From positions 7,006,001 through 7,070,000 of the forward strand of contig CATNEN010000025.1 of NCBI GenBank assembly GCA_950097015.1: DNA of 64,000 nucleotides, written 5' to 3'. Below are positions 41,471 to 50,960 of this stretch, piece after piece. The first letter of the stretch is position 1, and each line of letters opens with the position of its first letter. The notes beneath the pieces were generated by a model. It made no database searches and was not told the origin of the DNA. It saw only the letters and a list, made by a program, of their open reading frames with translations. Origin of the DNA: Macrostomum hystrix (taxonomy: Eukaryota; Animalia; Platyhelminthes). The position numbers and the translations under genes were made by a program.

Positions 41471-41971
41471 GCGAACTTTGCCGGGCACGTAGCCTCTATC
41501 AACATTCTGCTCCTGCAGGAACATGTGCAGGCACTTCTCGTTCTGAGCCAGCGGATGACCGGCCACCTTGTTGATGAAGTCCTCCAGGCCGCGACGACGC
41601 TCCTCGATGAAGTCGTCGTCGAAGCGACCGTCGCCGCCGCCGCGGAAAGGCAACTGCAGCCGCAGCGCCTTGCCTGGCAGTTTGGGGACGACAATCTTTG
41701 AGTCGCGCTCGAGTTCCCCGCGCAGCCATTCGAATTCCGAATAGCGCCGACGCACGGAGGACTCCTTGAGGCGGAACACTGGGAGGTTGGTGCGCATGCG
41801 AACCTCGTAGTCAGTGTAGCGGTCCTTGTTAACCCCGTGTGTCTCCGGATTGCAGACGTCGATTTCTAAGAAATTTGCCGGCGGGGAATACGCGTCCTCC
41901 AGAGTCTGACGCTTGTGCTGCAGACGTTGAATTGCAGCCGACGCTGTGGCACCCTGCGCTGATGCGCTCAT
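41462..41971 (-). CDS. SNX3: Sorting nexin 3/12 (PX-only), intronless, 169 aa
   Basis: QTLEDAYSPPANFLEIDVCNPETHG...RYTDYEVRMRTNLPVFRLKESSVRRRYSEFEWLRGELERDSKIVVPKLPGKA...FIEERRRGLEDFINKVAGHPLAQNEKCLHMFLQ. Confidence 0.95.
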   Translation of the reverse strand: MSASAQGATASAAIQRLQHKRQTLEDAYSPPANFLEIDVCNPETHGVNKDRYTDYEVRMRTNLPVFRLKESSVRRRYSEFEWLRGELERDSKIVVPKLPGKALRLQLPFRGGGDGRFDDDFIEERRRGLEDFINKVAGHPLAQNEKCLHMFLQEQNVDRGYVPGKVRTT

Positions 41972-42101
41972 GATACTACTGCTCTGGGATGTTAGAGTAG
42001 TGTGTGCAGCTTTTAGATGCCTTAATTTGTATTGGCAATACTCTTTCCGTCAACTACTTGGCAATAGGCTGGAATTGAAAAGATTTTTTTCTGGTAATTA
42101 T

Positions 42102-42137
42102 CTGACTGACTGACTGACTGACTGACTGACTGACTGA
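42102..42137. repeat. (CTGA)9 microsatellite in the DDI1-SNX3 spacer
   Basis: Direct read. Confidence 0.95.
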
Positions 42138-42591
42138 TTAAAAAAAGAAAGAAAAATATACGGGTTCTGATCAACCGAAAAAAAGAGAAAAAGAAAGCAG
42201 ACAAAAAACTAGTTTAGTTAGGCATAAATGTACATAAAAAACGAGACAAACACACAGAAACAATGGCTACAGTAAACAGTGATTTATTTTGCAGTTTAAT
42301 TACCGGATAAATAGAAGAGAACTTACACACAGCGCATGTGATGTTTTGTTGTAGATAGCAAAGCACATAACCATATATTCCTTGTAACTTTTTTTGTGCC
42401 GGAAACAGGCAGGGAAATGAAAGCAGGATCTAATTATTACAAGCAGTGTGATGGGGAAAAAAGACAACGCAGCAAAAATTCTAGAATTCCTTTGAGCAGA
42501 AATCGATGGGCGATAAAATTTGAAACAAAAAACTAAACAGGAAAGTTGCGAGTTCTAGTCTTTCCGAAAGTTTCCTGAACTTCAAGAAAGC

Positions 42592-45500
42592 TCACTGCCC
42601 GGCTGCTTCGCTTTGCCTAGCAACCAGGAATGCGATGGCGGCGTCCACCTCGCCCTGGCCGTGCATCAGGGCCTCGCGGGCGTCGTCAGCAGTTGTACCG
42701 TCCGGGCCGCCGGCGACAACGGCGTCGATCGACTCCTGGGTTATCGGCCTGCCGACGGCGTCACTGGCGCCGCCCCCGCTGTGCCTGGCGTCCTCGGGTA
42801 GGTCGGCCTCAGACAAGAAGGGCGCGGCAGTGCCCGTGGTCCCAATGACCAGCTTGTTCGACTGAGATGGGAATATGGGGATGGGAATGGGATAAATCAC
42901 GATTTTTAGCTATGGGGATCGGAATGGGATAAACCATGAGTTTTAGTTGTGCGGATCGGAATGGGATAAATCATGGATTTAATTATGGGGATGGGAATTG
43001 GATAAATCATGGTTTTTAGCTATGGGGATCGGAATGGGATAAATCATGGCTTCTAGTTATGGGAATGGGAATGGGATAAATCATGGCTTCTAGTTATGGT
43101 GAAGAGAATGGGATAAATCATGGCTTCTAGTAATGGGAATGGGAATGGGATAAATCATGGCTTCTAGTAATGGTGAAGAGAATGGGATAAATCATGGCTT
43201 CTAGTAATGGGAATGGGAATGGGATAAATCATGGCTTCTAGTTATGGGAATGGGAATGGGATAAATCATGGCTTCTAGTAATGGTGAAGAGAATGGGATA
43301 AATCATGGCTTCTAGTTATGGGAATGGGAATGGGATAAATCATGGCTTCTAGTTATGGTGAAGAGAATGGGATAAATCATGGCTTCTAGTTATGGGAATG
43401 GGAATGGGATAAATCATGGCTTCTAGTTATGGGAATGGGAATGGGATAAATCATGGCTTCTAGTTATGGGAATGGGAATGGGATAAATCATGGCTTCTAG
43501 TTATGGTGAAGAGAATGGGATAAATCATGGCTTCTAGTTATGGGAATGGGAATGGGATAAACCATGGCTTCTATAATAGTTATGGGGATTGGAATGGGAT
43601 AAATCAGGGTTTTTATTTGCATGGATCGGAATGGGATAAATCAGGGTTTTTATTTGCAGGGATCGGAATGGGATAAATCAGGGTTTTTATTTGCGGGGAT
43701 CGGAATGGGATAAATCAGGGTTTTTATTTGCGGGGATCGGAATGGGGTAAGTCATGGATACGAGGACTGGAGAGGGATTATTGGGATCAGTTTGGGATTT
43801 AACGCTGGCAACCAACATGATAAGTTATGAGCGGGACCAGAGTAACTAGGGTGCCAAACCTTCAAGTCGAGCAGGCACTGGTGTCGCTTGAGCATGTCCA
43901 GACCCAGCAGCAGATCCATGCTCTGGTCGCGCAGCACGCTAAAATTGCAGGCTAGAAAGTCGCCGCCAATCTGCAGCTGGCCGAGGTGAATGCGGCCAAC
44001 GATGGTCTGGGTGCCGACGCCGCGAGCGATGCCCGCCCAGCGCTTGTCGATCAGGCGCTCGACGCTGCAACGCTGGGCGCAGGCCAGGGACATTATGGTC
44101 ATCTGGGCGCCGCTGTCAACGAATGCTTTGACCGGATGGCCATTAACCTGGTGGCGAGGATTAGGCGCACGGTGCGTAGTTAAATTGCAATCATAGGCAG
44201 ACATTGTTTCTGTTTTTATGTAAAACTGCGTCTAAATAACTAGCTCACGAATATAGCTATATTACAACTGTTGTACATCGCTCAATGTACATTGCTAGCT
44301 ATGCAGCAACAAATATCCACACAGCCTCCAATGTACAATAAATCAATACATGTCAATACTTAATGTACACAGCAAAACAGAACCCAATGTACACAGCAAT
44401 ACAGAACCCAATGTACACAGCAATACAGAACCAAATATAAACAGCAATACAGCACTTAAAGTACAAAGACATACAGCACTTAATGTACACAGACATACAT
44501 TGGCAGTGTTGTACACAGCAACACTGTACTTTGCCCTGAACTCTCACAAGAGTCAGAGACTCACTTTGACATCAATGTAGAGCATAGTAACCGGGGCGAA
44601 GGCCTCCGGCATGTGCTCCAGCGCCGTCTCCATGCTGGCGTCGATGTTCTGCTGCTGAATGAGGCTCTGAATCTCCTGTTGGATGCGCGGATCGTAAGGA
44701 TTGGCGGCTAGAAGCCGAGCTCGCTCCTGAGCAGCCCGGGTTCGCTCCGATTGAGCCGCGCGGAGCAGCTCGGCAAACCTGGCCGGATTCTGTACAGCCT
44801 CGGCTAGCTGCGGGTTCTGCTGCCTCAGCGCCGCCAGCTGATCCGGCATGGCCAGAAGGGCCTGGCGAAGCATCTCGGGATTGGACATGACCGCCTCGGT
44901 GGCCGCCTCCTCCGACTGGCAAGGAAAGTCGCAGAATTTTTAGACATTTCCCTTTCTAAGAAAACGTGGAGCGCCATTGTAGAGAACGGAATTAAACCAT
45001 TCTTAGAAAACTGGATAAACCATTCTTAGAAAACTGTATAAACCATTCTTAGAAAACTGTATAAACCATTCTTAGAAAACTGGATAAACCATTTTTAGAA
45101 AACTGGATAAACCATTCTTAGAAGACTGGATAAACCATTCTTAGAAAACTGGATAAATAATTCTTAGAAAACTGGATAAAAAATTCTAAGAAAACTGGCT
45201 AAACCATTTTTAGAAAACTGAATTAACAATTCTTAGAAAACTGTATAAACAGTTCCTAGAAATAGGAGCTGTCATTCTTAGAAACAGGAAAGGTTAATCG
45301 GTAAAAACGAAAAATATCCCATTTCCTAGAAACAGGAAATTCTTTTTTCTTAGAAAACGGAAGATACCACATTTTAAGAAATGGAATACACGATTTCTAA
45401 TAAAACTGACAACTCCATTTTTTTGAAAACTGAAGATCCCATTATTTTTCAGTGTAGCTGCAACGCTAACTAATGACCAGTCACCTGAAAGCGACGCTGC

Positions 45501-45841
45501 TGATTCTGCCTGCCGCCGCTACCACCGCTTCCCAGCCTGACACTGGAGAAGTCAATCATCGGCGTTCCGCCTCCTCCGCCGACTCCAGCTCCACGAGCCT
45601 GCTGCTGCTGAGTAGGCATGGGCTGAGCTATGATCATGTCACCTTCGGTAATGCCGGCCTGACTCAGTTTAGCCTGCATGGAGCTGAGCGGCTGTCCATT
45701 GTGCAGCAGCACCACATTGTTGCCGGTTGGCAGACGCAGCTCGGCCCGAGAGACAGCCAGCAGCTCGGACACCGTCATATCAGGTGAGGCGTCCACCTGG
45801 GCTACGGCTCCCTCGCCTGTCAGGGTGGTCACAGTGAGCTT
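42592..45841 (-). CDS. DDI1: DNA-damage-inducible 1 aspartic protease (UBL-HDD-RVP-UBA), ~420 aa; exons 45841-45485, 44915-44565, 44147-43860, 42861-42592; start codon unresolved
   Basis: All junctions are phase 0 GT-AG. UBL KLTVTTL...; helical domain with [46 protein letters not shown]; [23 protein letters not shown]; C-terminal UBA-like [11 protein letters not shown]...AREAL...VDAAIAFL. Confidence 0.93.
42870..43750. repeat. ~34-37-bp minisatellite filling the last DDI1 intron
   Basis: Unit GGGATAAATCATGGCTTCTAGTTATGGGAATGGGAAT. Confidence 0.93.
44350..44520. repeat. 24-bp degenerate tandem repeat in a DDI1 intron
   Basis: AATGTACACAGCAATACAGAACCC. Confidence 0.75.
44990..45260. repeat. 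23-bp minisatellite in a DDI1 intron
   Basis: TAAACCATTCTTAGAAAACTGGA. Confidence 0.9.
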
Positions 45842-46079
45842 CTGCAGTGGGACGGCGACGTTTAATTTAATTGGAGAATGCTGGGGCGAAGTATGAAAGG
45901 AATATATCTCCAAGAAATAGTAAAACTGTCCCGATTAAGAGTTGGGATTGGGACTGGGATTTGAGGACGATGAAATATAAGGATTTGAGAGTATTGAAAT
46001 ATGGGATACGCTAGGATTCGAATTTCAGATTTTAGAGAATTAGAAGTCAAGATTCGCAAGTTCAGATCAGAAGGAGCAG

Positions 46080-46320
46080 AAGTTGGGATCTGTGAGGATC
46101 AGAAGATGGGATCTGTGAGGATCAGAAGTTGGGACTGTGAGCATCGGAAGTTGGGACATGGGAGGATCAGAAGCTGGGATCTGTGAGGATCAGAAGCTGG
46201 GATCTGTGAGGATCAGAAGCTGGGATCTGTGAGGATCAGAAGCTGGGATCTGTGAGGATCAGAAGCTGGGATCTGTGAGGATCAGAAGCTGGGATCTGTG
46301 AGGATCAGAAGTTGGGATTG
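46080..46320. repeat. 23-bp minisatellite upstream of the DDI1 UBL exon
   Basis: GATCAGAAGCTGGGATCTGTGAG; degenerate copies extend to ~46600. Confidence 0.9.
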
Positions 46321-47334
46321 TAGCATTAGAATGTGGGATCAGAATTTTAGATTTCGAGAGATTAGAAGTGGGGATTTGTAAGGATTCAAATCGTTGGGAT
46401 TTTGGGATTCAAGTTGGGATTTTGGAGGATAACAAGTTGAGTTGGGAAGTTGAGGTTTAGGAAGATCAGAAGTTGGGATTTAAGAGAATCAGAAGTCAGG
46501 CTAAGAAAGAATCAGAAGCTGGGATTTGGGAGAATCACATTCTGGGATTTGGAAGCATATCATTGGGATTGGGATAAGGATATAAGTTGGGATAAGGGAG
46601 GATAATACGTCGCTTTATTATTAAATCAGAAATAAGTTCAGTTCGGAAAGAAGCCCCAATACTAGCTCAAACTCGAAGTATCGCTCAATGTACATTGTAC
46701 ATTACACCAAGCCCTAAATCACATAAAATTGAAAAGTAAAGGAAAAACGGGATGAAAAACTGTAATATATTTTGTATTTATCGCTTTTTTTGCTGTATCA
46801 GCAAACAAAAACAACAACAGGCACAATATTTTATGGTAACTTGTCAAACAATAGATAAGCGAATTTACTTTAAAGTTCCACAAAATTATTTAAGAAGCAA
46901 GACTTTTTTGTTTCACTTGTGTCAAGGACAAGAAAACGCATTGCATGTCTACTAACAAACTTATCAGTAGTATAATGGGCAATACGAATATAAACAAAAA
47001 TTGAATTTTTAGTTTTCACCATACTAGAAAACCGGATGATAATTTAGAGACACGAACAGAGGGAGATAAGAATTAGAGCAAAACGAACGCTTATAATGGA
47101 TGTGTTTGCAGTGAGCACAGAAATGCAGAGATCCAGGTTAATTTCTTGCACTTTAGTTTTATGCTGAGTTCTAAGTATGTTAAGTTAAATTGTTGCAGCC
47201 TCAGTAAATAAACTTATGCATCACCATAATAGGCCTGAATCGTATAGACAAATGTTAGTCAAAAAAGGAAAATGAAATTCTGTCTGCAAAAAGCCTATAT
47301 TTTTACTTTTTTTCCCAATACCTGCCTGAGCAGG

Positions 47335-47760
47335 GGGGGAGGCAGTACATGCATGAGTAGGGGGGCAGTACATGTCTGAGTAGGGGGGGGCTGTACATGT
47401 CTGAGTATGGGGGCAGTAGATGTCTGAGTAGGGAGGCAGTAGATGTCTGAGTAGGGGGGGTCAGTACATGTCTGAGTAGGGGGGCAGTACATGTCTGAGT
47501 AGGGGGGCAGTAGATGTCTGAGTGGGGGGCAGTACATGTCTGAGTAGGGGGGCAGTGCATGTCTGAGTAGGGGGGCAGTACATGTCTGAGTAGGGGGGGC
47601 AGTACATGTCTGAGTAGGAGGGGCAGTACATGTCTGAGTAGGGGGTCAGTGCATGTCTGAGTAGGAGGGGCTGTGCATGACTGAGTAGGGGGTCAGTGCA
47701 TGACTGAGTAGGAGGGTCAGTGCATGTCTGAGTAGGGGGGGCAGTACATGTCTGATAAGG
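47335..47760. repeat. 23-bp G-tract minisatellite downstream of the U2B''-like gene
   Basis: GTACATGTCTGAGTAGGGGGGCA. Confidence 0.92.
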
Positions 47761-47826
47761 GGGTCAGAGGACTGCCTGTCTGAGCAGGGGAATGAAACCG
47801 CTAGCAATGTCCAGTCAGGCGTGGCT

Positions 47827-48579
47827 TTACTTTTTAGCAAACTTGATTTTCATGGCGTGCTCGGGATCAATGCGGAAGCCCTGATAGACATCCATGGCCG
47901 ACTTGGCCTGATCCTCGGTCTCGTATTCAATGAAAGCTACATCGGCCCGACCGTCTATGCACCTGGCCTCCTTAAAGCCGTCAACCTGGGAGAATAGCAT
48001 CTGAAGCATCTCGGCGGTGGTCTCGTCTGGCAGATTGTTCAACAATAGGACATTGTTGGACTCTTCTTCTTCCGGCCCGCCCTCTTCTTCCATCATTTGC
48101 GTGTCGTTGTCTCCAGCGGCCGCAGTCGATGCGGCGGCGGCGGCCGCGGCTGATTCGGCCTCCGTCATCATCCGGATGGTGATCTTCTTCTTGCGCTTCT
48201 CGGTGTCGGCATCTTGGGCGGATGAGGCGGCTGCGGCAGCGGCGGCGGATTTGGCAGCCTTCTTGTCGGCAGTCTTATCCGAATGACCTTTGAGGCGCTT
48301 GACAACGGTGGAATCTCGCTTAGCGAACTGCAGCCGCATCGGCTTATCAAAGAGCAGGAAGCCCTGCAGAGAGCGCATAGCAACAGTGGCGTGGCTGATG
48401 TCTTTGAAGCCGACAAAGGCCTGGCCGCGCATGCTGGGTGTCTTCATGGCCACCAGATCTACGACTTTGCCAAACTGATTGAACAGATAGTACAGACCGG
48501 CTTTTAAATCGGCCTTTTTAACGCGATCGTTCAAATTATTGACGTACAGCGTGTGACAGGGTCGATTGTCTAGCACCAT
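47827..48579 (-). CDS. SNRPB2: U1A/U2B''/SNF-family two-RRM protein, U2B''-like, intronless, 250 aa
   Basis: RRM1 HTLYVNNLNDRVKK...LYYLFNQFGKVVDLVAMKTPSMRGQAFVGFKD; RRM2 NNVLLLNNLPDETTAEMLQMLFSQVDGFKEAR...VAFIEYE...MKIKFAKK. Orthology is inferred from the beta2 residues. Confidence 0.85.
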   Translation of the reverse strand: MVLDNRPCHTLYVNNLNDRVKKADLKAGLYYLFNQFGKVVDLVAMKTPSMRGQAFVGFKDISHATVAMRSLQGFLLFDKPMRLQFAKRDSTVVKRLKGHSDKTADKKAAKSAAAAAAASSAQDADTEKRKKKITIRMMTEAESAAAAAAASTAAAGDNDTQMMEEEGGPEEEESNNVLLLNNLPDETTAEMLQMLFSQVDGFKEARCIDGRADVAFIEYETEDQAKSAMDVYQGFRIDPEHAMKIKFAKK

Positions 48580-48929
48580 TGTAATGGCGTCCGGTTAATT
48601 CTTTGAAGCGATGAATAAGGGTGGGTTAAAACGAATGGTAACGAAAGCAAATTGTTTGATTGCATTGAATTAATTGCGGCATCACTTGAACACTTACCTT
48701 CATAATGGTGGGTAATACCTGTATACACACCTAAGTTACTTTCAAATATAGTCTGCTTTCATTTTTCTCCAATAAATTTTGTTAAATCCCAATAAAAAGT
48801 TTGCTTATTTTCTTTGTACGCTGGCGCATAATGGCATCAGTCGGGTGAGGTTTCTGTTCTTTCATTCTCACAGACTAATACACAATTTAATGCGAACAGC
48901 GTATATATATGGAAATCATTTCAAGTTTT

Positions 48930-49770: not shown

Positions 49771-50494
49771 TTGCTGGGGGATCGAAAAAGTAGGTGAATG
49801 ATTTCTGAGGACCAATAATGGTAGCTAAAGGATTCCTGAGGGATTAATAAAGGGTGGCTGGATGATTCCTGAGGGATCAATTAAGGTAGCTGAGAGATTC
49901 CTGAGGGATCAATTTGGGTTTAAGTATCAAATTTGAGGAGACAGAGGTTCAGACCTTTAACTGAAGGGTTACAAAAAACTATATTTTGGCAATGATAAAA
50001 ATATGGTTAAAATCTATAGCATACTATATAGCATATGCTCAGGACCAAATGAGATTAACAACAAGAGAGCTCAAGTACCAAGCAGAAAAAACAATGAAGG
50101 AAATGTATTTTCCTGTCATTAGAGACACAACAATAAAATGATTACAAAATTGAAGGGAAATATTTAACATGAATAACATTAAACAAAAGCATATTATTAA
50201 GGGTGAAAATTCAGTGACAGTTAAGCGCATAGGTTCCTGTTACAAATCAAACTATAAGTTTTAATTTTACAAAACGTGTCCTCGTTTGATCTAGAAAATT
50301 ATTGAGCTTAAAACCAATTTACGAAACTTGAGATGAGATAAAACTTTAATTGATAACTATCAGAACAGCGTGGCTAAATATTGTAGGTTATTTCGTAGAA
50401 AATGCTAGCTCTGCACGACTCTTAAATGTATATTTATGCTTTTCAGTTTAGATAGTAATAAAATTATAAGAATTATGCCAATAAATACCCTACC

Positions 50495-50960
50495 CAGACA
50501 GGTAGTCAACTGACACCCCAATTAGACAGGTAGTCAACTGACCCCCTAATAAGACAGGTAGTCAACTGACACTCCATACTCAGACAGGTAGTCAACTGAC
50601 ACTCCATACTCAGACAGGTAGTCAACTGACACTCCATACTCAGACAGGTAGTCAACTGACACTCCATACTCAGACAGGTAGTCAACTGACACTCCATACT
50701 CAGACAGGTAGTCAACTGACACTCCATACTCAGACAGGTAGTCAACTGACACTCCATACTCAGACAGGTAGTCAACTTACCCCCCAATTAGACAGGTAGT
50801 CAACTGACCCCCCTAATTAGACAGGTAGTCAACTGACCCCCCAATTAGACAGGTAGTCAACTGACCCCCCAATTAGACAGGTAGTCAACTGACCCCCCCA
50901 ATTAGACAGGTAGTCAACTGACCCCCCAATTAGACAGGTAGTCAACTGACACAACTACTC
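50495..50960. repeat. 28-30-bp composite minisatellite in the U1A-like 3' region
   Basis: CAGACAGGTAGTCAACTGACACTCCATACT and TAGACAGGTAGTCAACTGACCCCCCAAT. Confidence 0.93.

What the first reader, a model, noticed from the sequence alone, without database searches (positions are those of the whole stretch)
45842..47023. DDI1 lacks an ATG at its UBL exon: spliced-leader AUG or a 4-nt micro-exon
Seen: the UBL starts KLTVTTL directly after a phase-0 acceptor (CCCACTGCAG|AAG at 45842/45841), so only a Met is missing. The in-frame read-through upstream (MEIYSFHTSP...) looks intronic. Known: flatworm spliced leaders end in AUG, which can serve as the initiator. Hypothesis A: trans-splicing here creates M-K-L-T-V, making the gene dependent on SL addition. 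Hypothesis B: TTTTCTAG|TATG|GTGAAA at 47023-47020 is a tiny ATG exon. An AATAAA at 46619-46614 lies between the two sites.
Basis: partly seen in the sequence, partly recalled or inferred. Interest (0 to 1): 0.75.

Follow-up and report, generated by a model that had tools for sequence, protein, structure and literature searches.

The report
Spliced leader supplies DDI1 start codon
In this Macrostomum flatworm the DDI1 protease-shuttle gene has no start codon in its own DNA, and transcript assemblies show the trans-spliced leader, which ends in AUG, joined in frame to its first exon; this mechanism is already known in flatworms.

Summary

- **Gene:** A four-exon DDI1/DDI2-type gene lies on the minus strand. 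Its exons are 45841-45485, 44915-44565, 44147-43860 and 42861-42592.
- **Missing start codon:** Exon 1 begins with AAG CTC ACT GTG (KLTV) directly after the acceptor CTGCAG. There is no in-frame ATG between that acceptor and the nearest upstream stop.
- **RNA evidence:** Spliced transcript contigs from three public runs in two studies leave the genome exactly at 45842/45841. They continue with a 23-26 nt sequence that is an exact suffix of the published 35-nt Macrostomum lignano spliced leader (...TTATTGCATG). The mRNA therefore reads ...GCATG|AAGCTC, which is M-K-L-T-V.
- **Orthologues:** DDI1 proteins from other animals begin M-[KRNQ]-L-T-[IVL]-T-T, so exactly one Met was missing.
- **Leader origin:** The leader is not encoded anywhere in the 64-kb window.
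- **Hypothesis B has no support:** No contig joins the TATG at 47023-47020 to 45841. Three contigs run unspliced through the TATG. ATG|GT occurs in the spacer at about the chance rate.

Use of the flatworm leader's AUG as initiator has been known since Cheng et al. 2006. This scan has already followed up several other such genes in the same genome, on other DNA. This is a new, well-documented example, not a new principle. Actual initiation at the leader AUG is inferred, not shown.

The parts
45842..45851 (-). Trans-splice acceptor cccactgcag. CTGCAG fits the published M. lignano SL-acceptor motif [T/C]TNCAG.
   Evidence: Sequence; motif from PMC8629364. Contigs of all 4 runs stop matching the genome at 45842.
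45485..45841 (-). DDI1 exon 1, 357 nt or 119 codons, phase 0. It encodes the UBL domain starting at residue 2 (KLTVTTL...) and has no ATG of its own before codon 22. The donor is CAG|gtgact.
   Evidence: The contig loose ends plus the base at 45842 form an exact SL suffix.
44565..44915 (-). DDI1 exon 2, 351 nt. It encodes the HDD domain. The donor is AAA|gtgagt.
   Evidence: Joint 44915/45485 seen in 4 runs and joint 44145/44563 (cut +2) in X4 and X5. Pfam Ddi2_HDD at 3.7e-16. Boundaries checked.
43860..44147 (-). DDI1 exon 3, 288 nt. It encodes the retropepsin-type aspartyl protease domain with the catalytic DSGA.
   Evidence: Pfam PF09668 at 4.5e-41. Contig pieces; translation.
42592..42861 (-). 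DDI1 exon 4 coding part, 89 codons plus the TGA at 42594-42592. The C-terminal tail looks UBA-like by eye only.
   Evidence: The loose end before 43860, reverse-complemented, is TCGAACAAGCTGG..., which matches 42861 onward. Pfam finds nothing.
42260..42591 (-). DDI1 3' UTR. AATAAA lies at 42288-42283, and the 3' end at about 42260 is inferred.
   Evidence: The 1621-nt contig leaves 602 nt after exon 3, which runs from 42861 to 42260 if contiguous. AATAAA position.
45842..47826 (-). A 1,985-nt spacer between the stop of the upstream snRNP-protein gene and the DDI1 acceptor. It is the outron, the upstream 3' UTR, or both. It is largely degenerate 23-nt tandem repeats (46072-46340, 46446-46564, 47337-47767).
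   Evidence: No Rfam family matches.
47020..47023 (-). The TATG flanked by AG and GT. This candidate micro-exon is not used in any contig.
   Evidence: Contigs X1 46786-47186, X5 46995-47380 and X4 47016-47372 run through it unspliced, and no joint is listed. It occurs at about the chance rate.
46614..46619 (-). The only AATAAA in the spacer. It may be the poly(A) signal of the upstream gene, but this was not tested.
   Evidence: No contig covers 45843-46785.
47827..48579 (-). Upstream same-strand intronless gene for a U1A/U2B''-type protein with two RRMs.
   Evidence: Contigs lie from 47636 or 47672 up to 48600 and beyond.

Best explanation
DDI1 pre-mRNA is SL trans-spliced at the acceptor CTGCAG|AAG (45842/45841).

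- **Start codon:** The 35-nt Macrostomum spliced leader ends in AUG. Joining it puts that AUG directly in front of AAG CTC ACT GTG. The leader therefore supplies both the 32-nt 5' UTR and the start codon.
- **Protein:** The result is a 422-residue protein of UBL, HDD and retropepsin domains plus a C-terminal tail, beginning MKLTVTTL.
- **Without the leader:** The first in-frame AUG would be exon-1 codon 22. Starting there would remove the first strands of the UBL fold.

Shown here: the SL-exon junction in transcripts, the reading frame, the absence of a genomic ATG, and the orthologue N-termini. Inferred: that ribosomes start at the SL AUG, and that the gene depends on the SL.
For: - **SL junction in transcripts:** Transcript contigs of X2, X4 and X5 (two studies) are spliced across GT..AG introns, so they are RNA-derived. 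They carry loose ends behind 45842. Together with the base at 45842, these loose ends are exact 26- and 23-nt suffixes of the published SL CGGTCTCTTACTGCGAAGACTCAATTTATTGCATG.
- **Match to this locus:** The X4 and X5 contigs match it with 0 differences over 997 nt.
- **Leader not in cis:** The SL is not in the window, even allowing up to 3 mismatches.
- **Acceptor:** It fits the published trans-splice motif [T/C]TNCAG.
- **No genomic start codon:** There is no in-frame ATG upstream before a stop, and the SL holds a single ATG, its last three bases.
- **Orthologue N-termini:** Orthologues begin MKLTITTL, MRLTVTTL and similar, with Met directly before the residue aligned to K1.
- **Literature:** The flatworm SL AUG can serve as initiator in vivo (Cheng et al. 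2006, as cited in PMC5832876 and PMC3510090). The Macrostomum SL is described as likely containing the start codon (PMC10468722).
- **Public gene model:** A M. lignano gene model for a diverged second copy (UniProt A0A1I8F9U5) also starts KLTVTTL without Met.
Against: - The evidence comes from assembled contigs, not raw reads. Rare alternative 5' ends could have been dropped, and the share of SL-bearing molecules is unknown.
- Only 22-25 nt of the leader is visible on the contigs.
- There are no protein-level data showing that the SL AUG is the start actually used. With a 32-nt leader, some leaky scanning to the next in-frame AUG cannot be excluded.
Confidence: 0.9

Rival explanations
1. A conventional cis-spliced 5' exon ending in ATG supplies the start codon. 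This could be the TATG at 47023-47020, or a longer first exon ending at 47020 or at the other ATG|GT at 47227-47225. The SL form would then be minor.
For: The AG|TATG|GTGAAA string exists at 47023-47020. Low-depth transcribed sequence covers 46786-47380. An earlier follow-up in this genome (s1-316733) found one gene with its ATG in a tiny upstream exon.
Against: - No joint to 45841 is seen in any of 4 runs. Three contigs cross 47023-47020 unspliced.
- The dominant contigs, at depth 87-107, carry the SL.
- The donor GTGAA departs from the GT[G/A]AG motif.
- ATG|GT occurs at the chance rate (2 against 0.8 expected, P = 0.19).
Confidence: 0.03
2. The mRNA is SL trans-spliced, but translation mostly starts at the internal in-frame AUG (exon-1 codon 22, 45778-45776). 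This would give a DDI1 with a truncated, non-functional UBL.
For: The 5' UTR before the SL AUG is only 32 nt, which can favour leaky scanning; this is general knowledge and was not tested here. PMC3510090 notes that not all SL AUGs need be used in vivo.
Against: - The SL AUG is the first AUG and is in frame.
- It recreates the conserved N-terminus MKLT[IV]TTL.
- The 21 codons before the internal Met are conserved UBL sequence and are kept in the second M. lignano copy.
Confidence: 0.05
3. The leader on the contigs is an assembly chimera, and the true 5' end is unknown.
For: De Bruijn contigs can join sequences that share k-mers.
Against: The same junction appears in three runs of two studies. 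It sits exactly at a canonical acceptor, in frame, and the letters are an exact SL suffix. The SL shares no sequence with the locus beyond a single G.
Confidence: 0.01

Closest known systems
[quoted passage not shown]
   Same: The SL ends in AUG and is joined in frame to an exon that lacks its own ATG. The SL Met restores the N-terminus conserved in orthologues. PMC3510090 describes this situation for 4 of 8 listed E. granulosus cDNAs, and it cites Cheng 2006 for 35 S. japonicum genes.
   Different: The host here is a free-living macrostomorph flatworm and the gene is DDI1. No in-vivo translation test was done here. I could not read the 2006 paper itself because it is not held, so I rely on how other papers cite it.
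SL trans-splicing and operons of Macrostomum lignano (Wudarski 2017, PMC5730564; Ustyantsev & Berezikov 2021, PMC8629364)
   Same: The 35-nt SL sequence is the same and the acceptor motif [T/C]TNCAG matches. The gene is conserved and lies on the same strand as its neighbours, and the spacer is swollen by repeats, as those authors describe for operons.
   Different: The parts of those papers I read quantify trans-splicing and operons but do not discuss SL-AUG-dependent genes or DDI1. Operon membership of DDI1 is not shown here.
DDI1/DDI2 ubiquitin-shuttle aspartyl proteases (yeast Ddi1, human DDI2)
   Same: The domains UBL, HDD and retropepsin with DSGA occur in the same order. The protease domain is 60-76% identical to animal DDI1/2.
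   Different: The start codon is not in the gene. The C-terminal UBA is not detectable by Pfam or BLASTP.
Nematode SL1/SL2 trans-splicing
   Same: An outron is removed at an unpaired 3' splice site and a leader is added. Polycistrons can be resolved this way.
   Different: From general knowledge, not tested here: nematode leaders do not end in AUG, so they give no start codon.

Membership tests
SL-AUG-initiated trans-spliced mRNA (flatworm type) | The organism's spliced leader ends in AUG | tested here: met
   The published M. lignano SL ends ...TTGCATG (PMC8629364). The contig loose ends reproduce its last 23-26 nt.
SL-AUG-initiated trans-spliced mRNA (flatworm type) | The SL is joined to the gene's first coding exon in transcripts, and the leader is not encoded in cis | tested here: met
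   Loose ends at 45842 in X2, X4 and X5. There are 0 matches to the SL in the 64-kb window at up to 3 mismatches.
SL-AUG-initiated trans-spliced mRNA (flatworm type) | The SL AUG is in frame with the main ORF, with no intervening stop | tested here: met
   ATG|AAG CTC ACT... The exon is phase 0 and 119 codons are open.
SL-AUG-initiated trans-spliced mRNA (flatworm type) | No genomic ATG can give the complete conserved N-terminus | tested here: met
   There is no in-frame ATG between the upstream stop and 45841. The first internal in-frame ATG is codon 22. Orthologues start with Met directly before the K1 position.
SL-AUG-initiated trans-spliced mRNA (flatworm type) | The protein is actually initiated at the SL AUG | not testable with these tools
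   This needs N-terminal proteomics or a reporter assay.
DDI1/DDI2 family | N-terminal ubiquitin-like domain | tested here: met
   Pfam Rad60-SLD at 8.1e-6, above its cut-off. Alignment A1 with DDI1 orthologues.
DDI1/DDI2 family | HDD helical domain followed by a retropepsin-like domain with catalytic D[ST]GA | tested here: met
   PF24669 at 3.7e-16 and PF09668 at 4.5e-41. FVDSGAQ in the exon 3 translation.
DDI1/DDI2 family | C-terminal UBA domain (present in many members but not all) | tested here: inconclusive
   No Pfam hit even at E up to 10. BLASTP against the UBA-bearing tail of P0154 finds only the pre-UBA segment, at E = 0.18.
Downstream cistron of a Macrostomum operon | A same-strand upstream gene, an SL-trans-spliced downstream gene, and a repeat-adjusted spacer under 1 kb (criterion of PMC8629364) | tested here: inconclusive
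   Same strand and SL trans-splicing are both met. The stop-to-acceptor distance is 1,985 nt, of which at least about 790 nt is called tandem repeat. The upstream poly(A) site is unknown, so the adjusted distance cannot be fixed.
Downstream cistron of a Macrostomum operon | Precursor RNA bridging both genes | tested here: inconclusive
   Contigs cover 46786-47380, 47542-47594 and 47636 onward, but nothing covers 45843-46785, which is repeat-rich and where contigs break.
Cis-spliced ATG micro-exon | Transcripts joining 47020 to 45841 | tested here: not met
   No such joint is listed, and contigs read through the site. Contigs can miss rare forms.

The most novel reading that the evidence does not exclude
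DDI1 may be a downstream cistron of a repeat-swollen polycistron: U1A-like, then U2B''-like, then DDI1, and perhaps the SNX3-like gene that starts about 290 nt after the inferred DDI1 poly(A) site. In that case a single trans-splicing event both cuts DDI1 out of the precursor and supplies its start codon. The unprocessed precursor could then never yield full-length DDI1. The arrangement would be kept in both diverged M. lignano copies.
Probability: 0.3. Interest if true: 0.35.

Novelty: new member of a known kind. Interest (0 to 1): 0.22.

Why it matters
- **Gene model:** The result fixes the DDI1 gene model. The protein has 422 residues and Met1 comes from the leader.
- **Annotation:** It explains why an automatic model of the second copy (UniProt A0A1I8F9U5) starts at Lys. 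Annotation pipelines for Macrostomum and other flatworms must add the SL AUG, or they will truncate such genes or label them partial.
- **Biology:** It adds a conserved proteostasis gene to the set whose translation is coupled to trans-splicing. It does not change the known principle.

Tried and rejected
- **Word-indexed protein search with exon 1:** No hit. The tool's length window excludes the roughly 422-aa full-length protein, so the blank says nothing.
- I searched exon by exon only, so the full-length Macrostomum protein and its transcript contigs could not be fetched by exact look-up.
- **The look-up of encoding contigs for P0121:** Not on record.
- **Conservation of the ATG-less exon in parasitic flatworms:** The S. 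bovis and E. caproni DDI1 loci (L003, L004) were fetched and searched by tblastn. Neither contains a UBL exon, because the contigs are too short or the introns too long. The question stays open.
- **P0128 and P0133 loci:** Both have a genomic ATG with 217-512 nt upstream. Their organisms are unknown, so they are not informative.
- **Rfam scan of 45000-48700:** Nothing found.
- **UBA domain test:** Not supported.
- **Cheng et al. 2006:** Not held in the library. It is cited only through papers that describe it.

Full report
**Observation**

On the minus strand the sequence reads ...aaacgtcgccgtcccactgcag|AAGCTCACTGTGACCACCCTG. The AG of the acceptor is at 45843-45842 and the first exon base is at 45841. 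The frame gives [22 protein letters not shown]... and stays open for 119 codons up to a donor CAG|gtgact at 45485/45484.

Reading the same frame upstream gives ...NS*SGQFYYFLEIYSFHTSPQHSPIKLNVAVPLQ. This stretch contains no ATG. The 'MEIYSF' open reading frame in the ORF list starts at a TTG, which the bacterial translation table counts as a start. The first in-frame ATG inside the exon is codon 22, at 45778-45776.

The string tttctag|TATG|gtgaaa is at 47023-47020. The only AATAAA in the spacer is at 46619-46614.

**The gene**

Pfam assigns the four coding blocks as follows:
- a ubiquitin-like domain (Rad60-SLD, 8.1e-6);
- the Ddi2 HDD domain (3.7e-16);
- the DDI-type aspartyl protease PF09668 (4.5e-41);
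- no family for the last block.

The protease block is 60-76% identical to animal DDI1/DDI2 proteins.

The upstream neighbour on the same strand, at 48579-47827, is an intronless two-RRM protein of the U1A/U2B'' type. The downstream same-strand neighbour is a PX-domain protein that I call SNX3-like, starting at 41971.

**RNA evidence**

One look-up found seven public runs that hold exon 1. I laid the contigs of four of them on window:43700-48600.

The contigs are clearly cDNA-derived. A 1621-nt contig in X4 and in X5 lies on 45842-45485, 44915-44563 and 43860-44145 with 0 differences. Its joints are GT..AG on the minus strand. The same exon 1/exon 2 joint is present in X1 and X2.

For the second intron the tool notes that the cut fits equally well two bases on. 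That placement gives canonical AAA|gtgagt...ccag|GTT, so the exons are 44915-44565 and 44147-43860. The letters that run on before 43860 match 42861 onward, after the acceptor ccatctcag|.

All three introns are phase 0. The coding length is 1 + 119 + 117 + 96 + 89 = 422 codons. I checked the frame exon by exon.

**The 5' end**

In all four runs the contigs stop matching the genome at 45842. In X2, X4 and X5 the loose letters are legible: on the + strand they read ATGCAATAAATTGAGTCTTCGC(AGT).

Reverse-complemented, and followed by the base at 45842, they are an exact 26-nt (X2) or 23-nt (X4, X5) suffix of the published 35-nt M. lignano spliced leader, CGGTCTCTTACTGCGAAGACTCAATTTATTGCATG (PMC8629364; check). 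The G at 45842 is shared by the leader's last base and the acceptor AG, which is why the aligner extends one base into the intron. By the GT-AG rule the product is ...TTGCATG|AAGCTCACT.

Four further points bear on this junction:
- The leader does not occur in the 64-kb window, even with three mismatches, so it is added in trans.
- The acceptor CTGCAG fits the motif [T/C]TNCAG reported for M. lignano trans-splice sites.
- The leader has a single ATG, its last three bases. On the mature mRNA the first AUG is therefore in frame and directly precedes the Lys codon, giving MKLTVTTL.
- Only 22-25 nt of the leader is visible. I attribute this to how contigs are built, since thousands of mRNAs share the leader; that reading is an inference.

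**Is a single Met what is missing?**

A search of 1.84 billion representative proteins with exon 1 found DDI1 UBL domains. In most of them, query residue 1 aligns to residue 2 of the hit. The sequences begin MKLTITTL, MRLTVTTL, MNLTITTL and MQLMITT. In alignment A1, 8 of 9 orthologues have Met directly before the position of K1. The leader's AUG therefore restores the family's normal N-terminus.

The best hit, P0121, is UniProt A0A1I8F9U5 from Macrostomum lignano. It is a poorly modelled, diverged second copy: 37 of the first 41 residues are identical, and the C-terminal tail is 85% identical. Its public model also begins KLTVTTL without Met. This shows that annotation fails on such genes. It also suggests, though it does not prove, that the other copy has the same arrangement.

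**Hypothesis B**

- **No joint:** No contig joins 47020 to 45841.
- **Read-through:** Contigs X1 46786-47186, X5 46995-47380 and X4 47016-47372 cross the TATG without splicing.
- **Depth:** Their depths are 3, 16 and 8. That is close to the upstream gene's contigs (about 15-18 in X4 and X5) and far below the DDI1 mRNA contigs (87-107). This hints that the stretch belongs to the upstream gene's long 3' UTR or to a precursor. The tool warns that contig depth is a poor measure, so I treat this only as a hint.
- **Donor:** GTGAA departs from the reported GT[G/A]AG donor motif.
- **Chance:** ATG|GT occurs twice in the 1,985-nt spacer against 0.8 expected in shuffles (P = 0.19).

The motif is therefore no more than chance would give, and nothing shows that it is used. 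Contigs can drop rare forms, so a minor isoform is not excluded.

**Mechanism**

- **Shown:** the SL-exon junction, its frame, the lack of any genomic ATG that could give the full N-terminus, and the orthologue N-termini.
- **Established knowledge:** flatworm leaders end in AUG, and this AUG can act as initiator in vivo. The source is Cheng et al. 2006, J Biol Chem 281:733, as described in PMC5832876, PMC3510090 and PMC3512318. The original paper is not held. [quoted passage not shown]
- **Inferred:** ribosomes start at the leader AUG on DDI1 mRNA, and a message without the leader could give at best a protein that starts at codon 22 and lacks the first part of the UBL fold.

**Operon question**

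DDI1 lies between same-strand genes. Much of the spacer is 23-nt tandem repeat (46072-46340, 46446-46564, 47337-47767). PMC8629364 reports that repeats swell operon spacers in this species and uses a repeat-adjusted limit of 1 kb.

Contigs of the upstream gene break inside the 47337-47767 array and resume on its far side. No contig covers 45843-46785. The poly(A) site of the upstream gene and any bridging precursor therefore remain unknown.

The DDI1 3' end is inferred at about 42260, 23 nt after the AATAAA at 42288-42283. That is roughly 290 nt before the ATG of the SNX3-like gene. I put co-transcription at about 0.3.

**Comparison and novelty**

This works like, and meets every testable criterion of, the flatworm class in which the leader AUG acts as initiator. 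The one untestable criterion is protein-level proof.

M. lignano's leader, its acceptor motif and the extent of trans-splicing are all published. This scan has already noted many such genes in the same genome on other DNA (31 notes). Follow-ups have supported TAF10, XPA, TOP3A and others, and one claimed case was overturned by a tiny upstream ATG exon. Those are unchecked AI notes, and I did not use them as evidence.

DDI1 is thus a new member of a known kind, documented here with transcript evidence. Interest is low. The value lies in the corrected gene model and in annotation practice.

**Limits**

- The runs are Logan contigs, not raw reads.
- Run type was guessed by the tool and confirmed here only through the splicing seen in the contigs.
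- Proportions of isoforms, RNA strand and exact RNA ends cannot be read from contigs.

Noticed in passing
window 47337-47767 and 50488-50855: The 23-nt tandem array (unit GGGGGGCAGTACATGTCTGAGTA on the + strand) starts about 60 nt after the stop of the U2B''-like gene. The old tandem duplication may therefore have carried the 3' flank and its repeat with it.
   Followed up: partly
window 45861-45871 (minus strand): ATTAAATTAAA, two overlapping ATTAAA poly(A)-signal variants, lies only 20-30 nt upstream of the DDI1 trans-splice acceptor. It could mark a very tight poly(A)/trans-splice spacing as in nematode operons, or it could be chance.
   Followed up: no
window 41972-42260 (minus strand): The SNX3-like PX-domain gene starts at ATG 41971, about 290 nt after the inferred DDI1 poly(A) site. 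A possible acceptor, catcccag|AGC, lies 14 nt before that ATG. The spacer holds a (GTCA)n microsatellite at about 42100-42140. This gene may be a further trans-spliced cistron.
   Followed up: no
window 44339-44358 and 45337-45357: In X4 and X5 a 378-nt contig of depth about 30 touches only 20-nt pieces inside DDI1 introns 2 and 1. The pieces are linked by 11 foreign letters, and long loose ends extend on both sides (tables 5c, 7 and 8). It is probably an expressed repeat copy from elsewhere in the genome, but this is unexplained.
   Followed up: no
window 42862-43000, 43497-43818 and 45850-46650 (minus strand): The DDI1 introns and the outron are filled with related TCCCA-rich short repeats ('atcccattcc', 'atcccaacttctgatcct'). 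These show up in ORF lists as spurious YPIPIPI-type peptides.
   Followed up: no
P0121 (UniProt A0A1I8F9U5, M. lignano): This public gene model of a second, diverged DDI1 copy is fragmentary, appears frame-shifted in its middle part, and begins with Lys instead of Met. It is an annotation casualty of the SL-donated start codon.
   Followed up: partly
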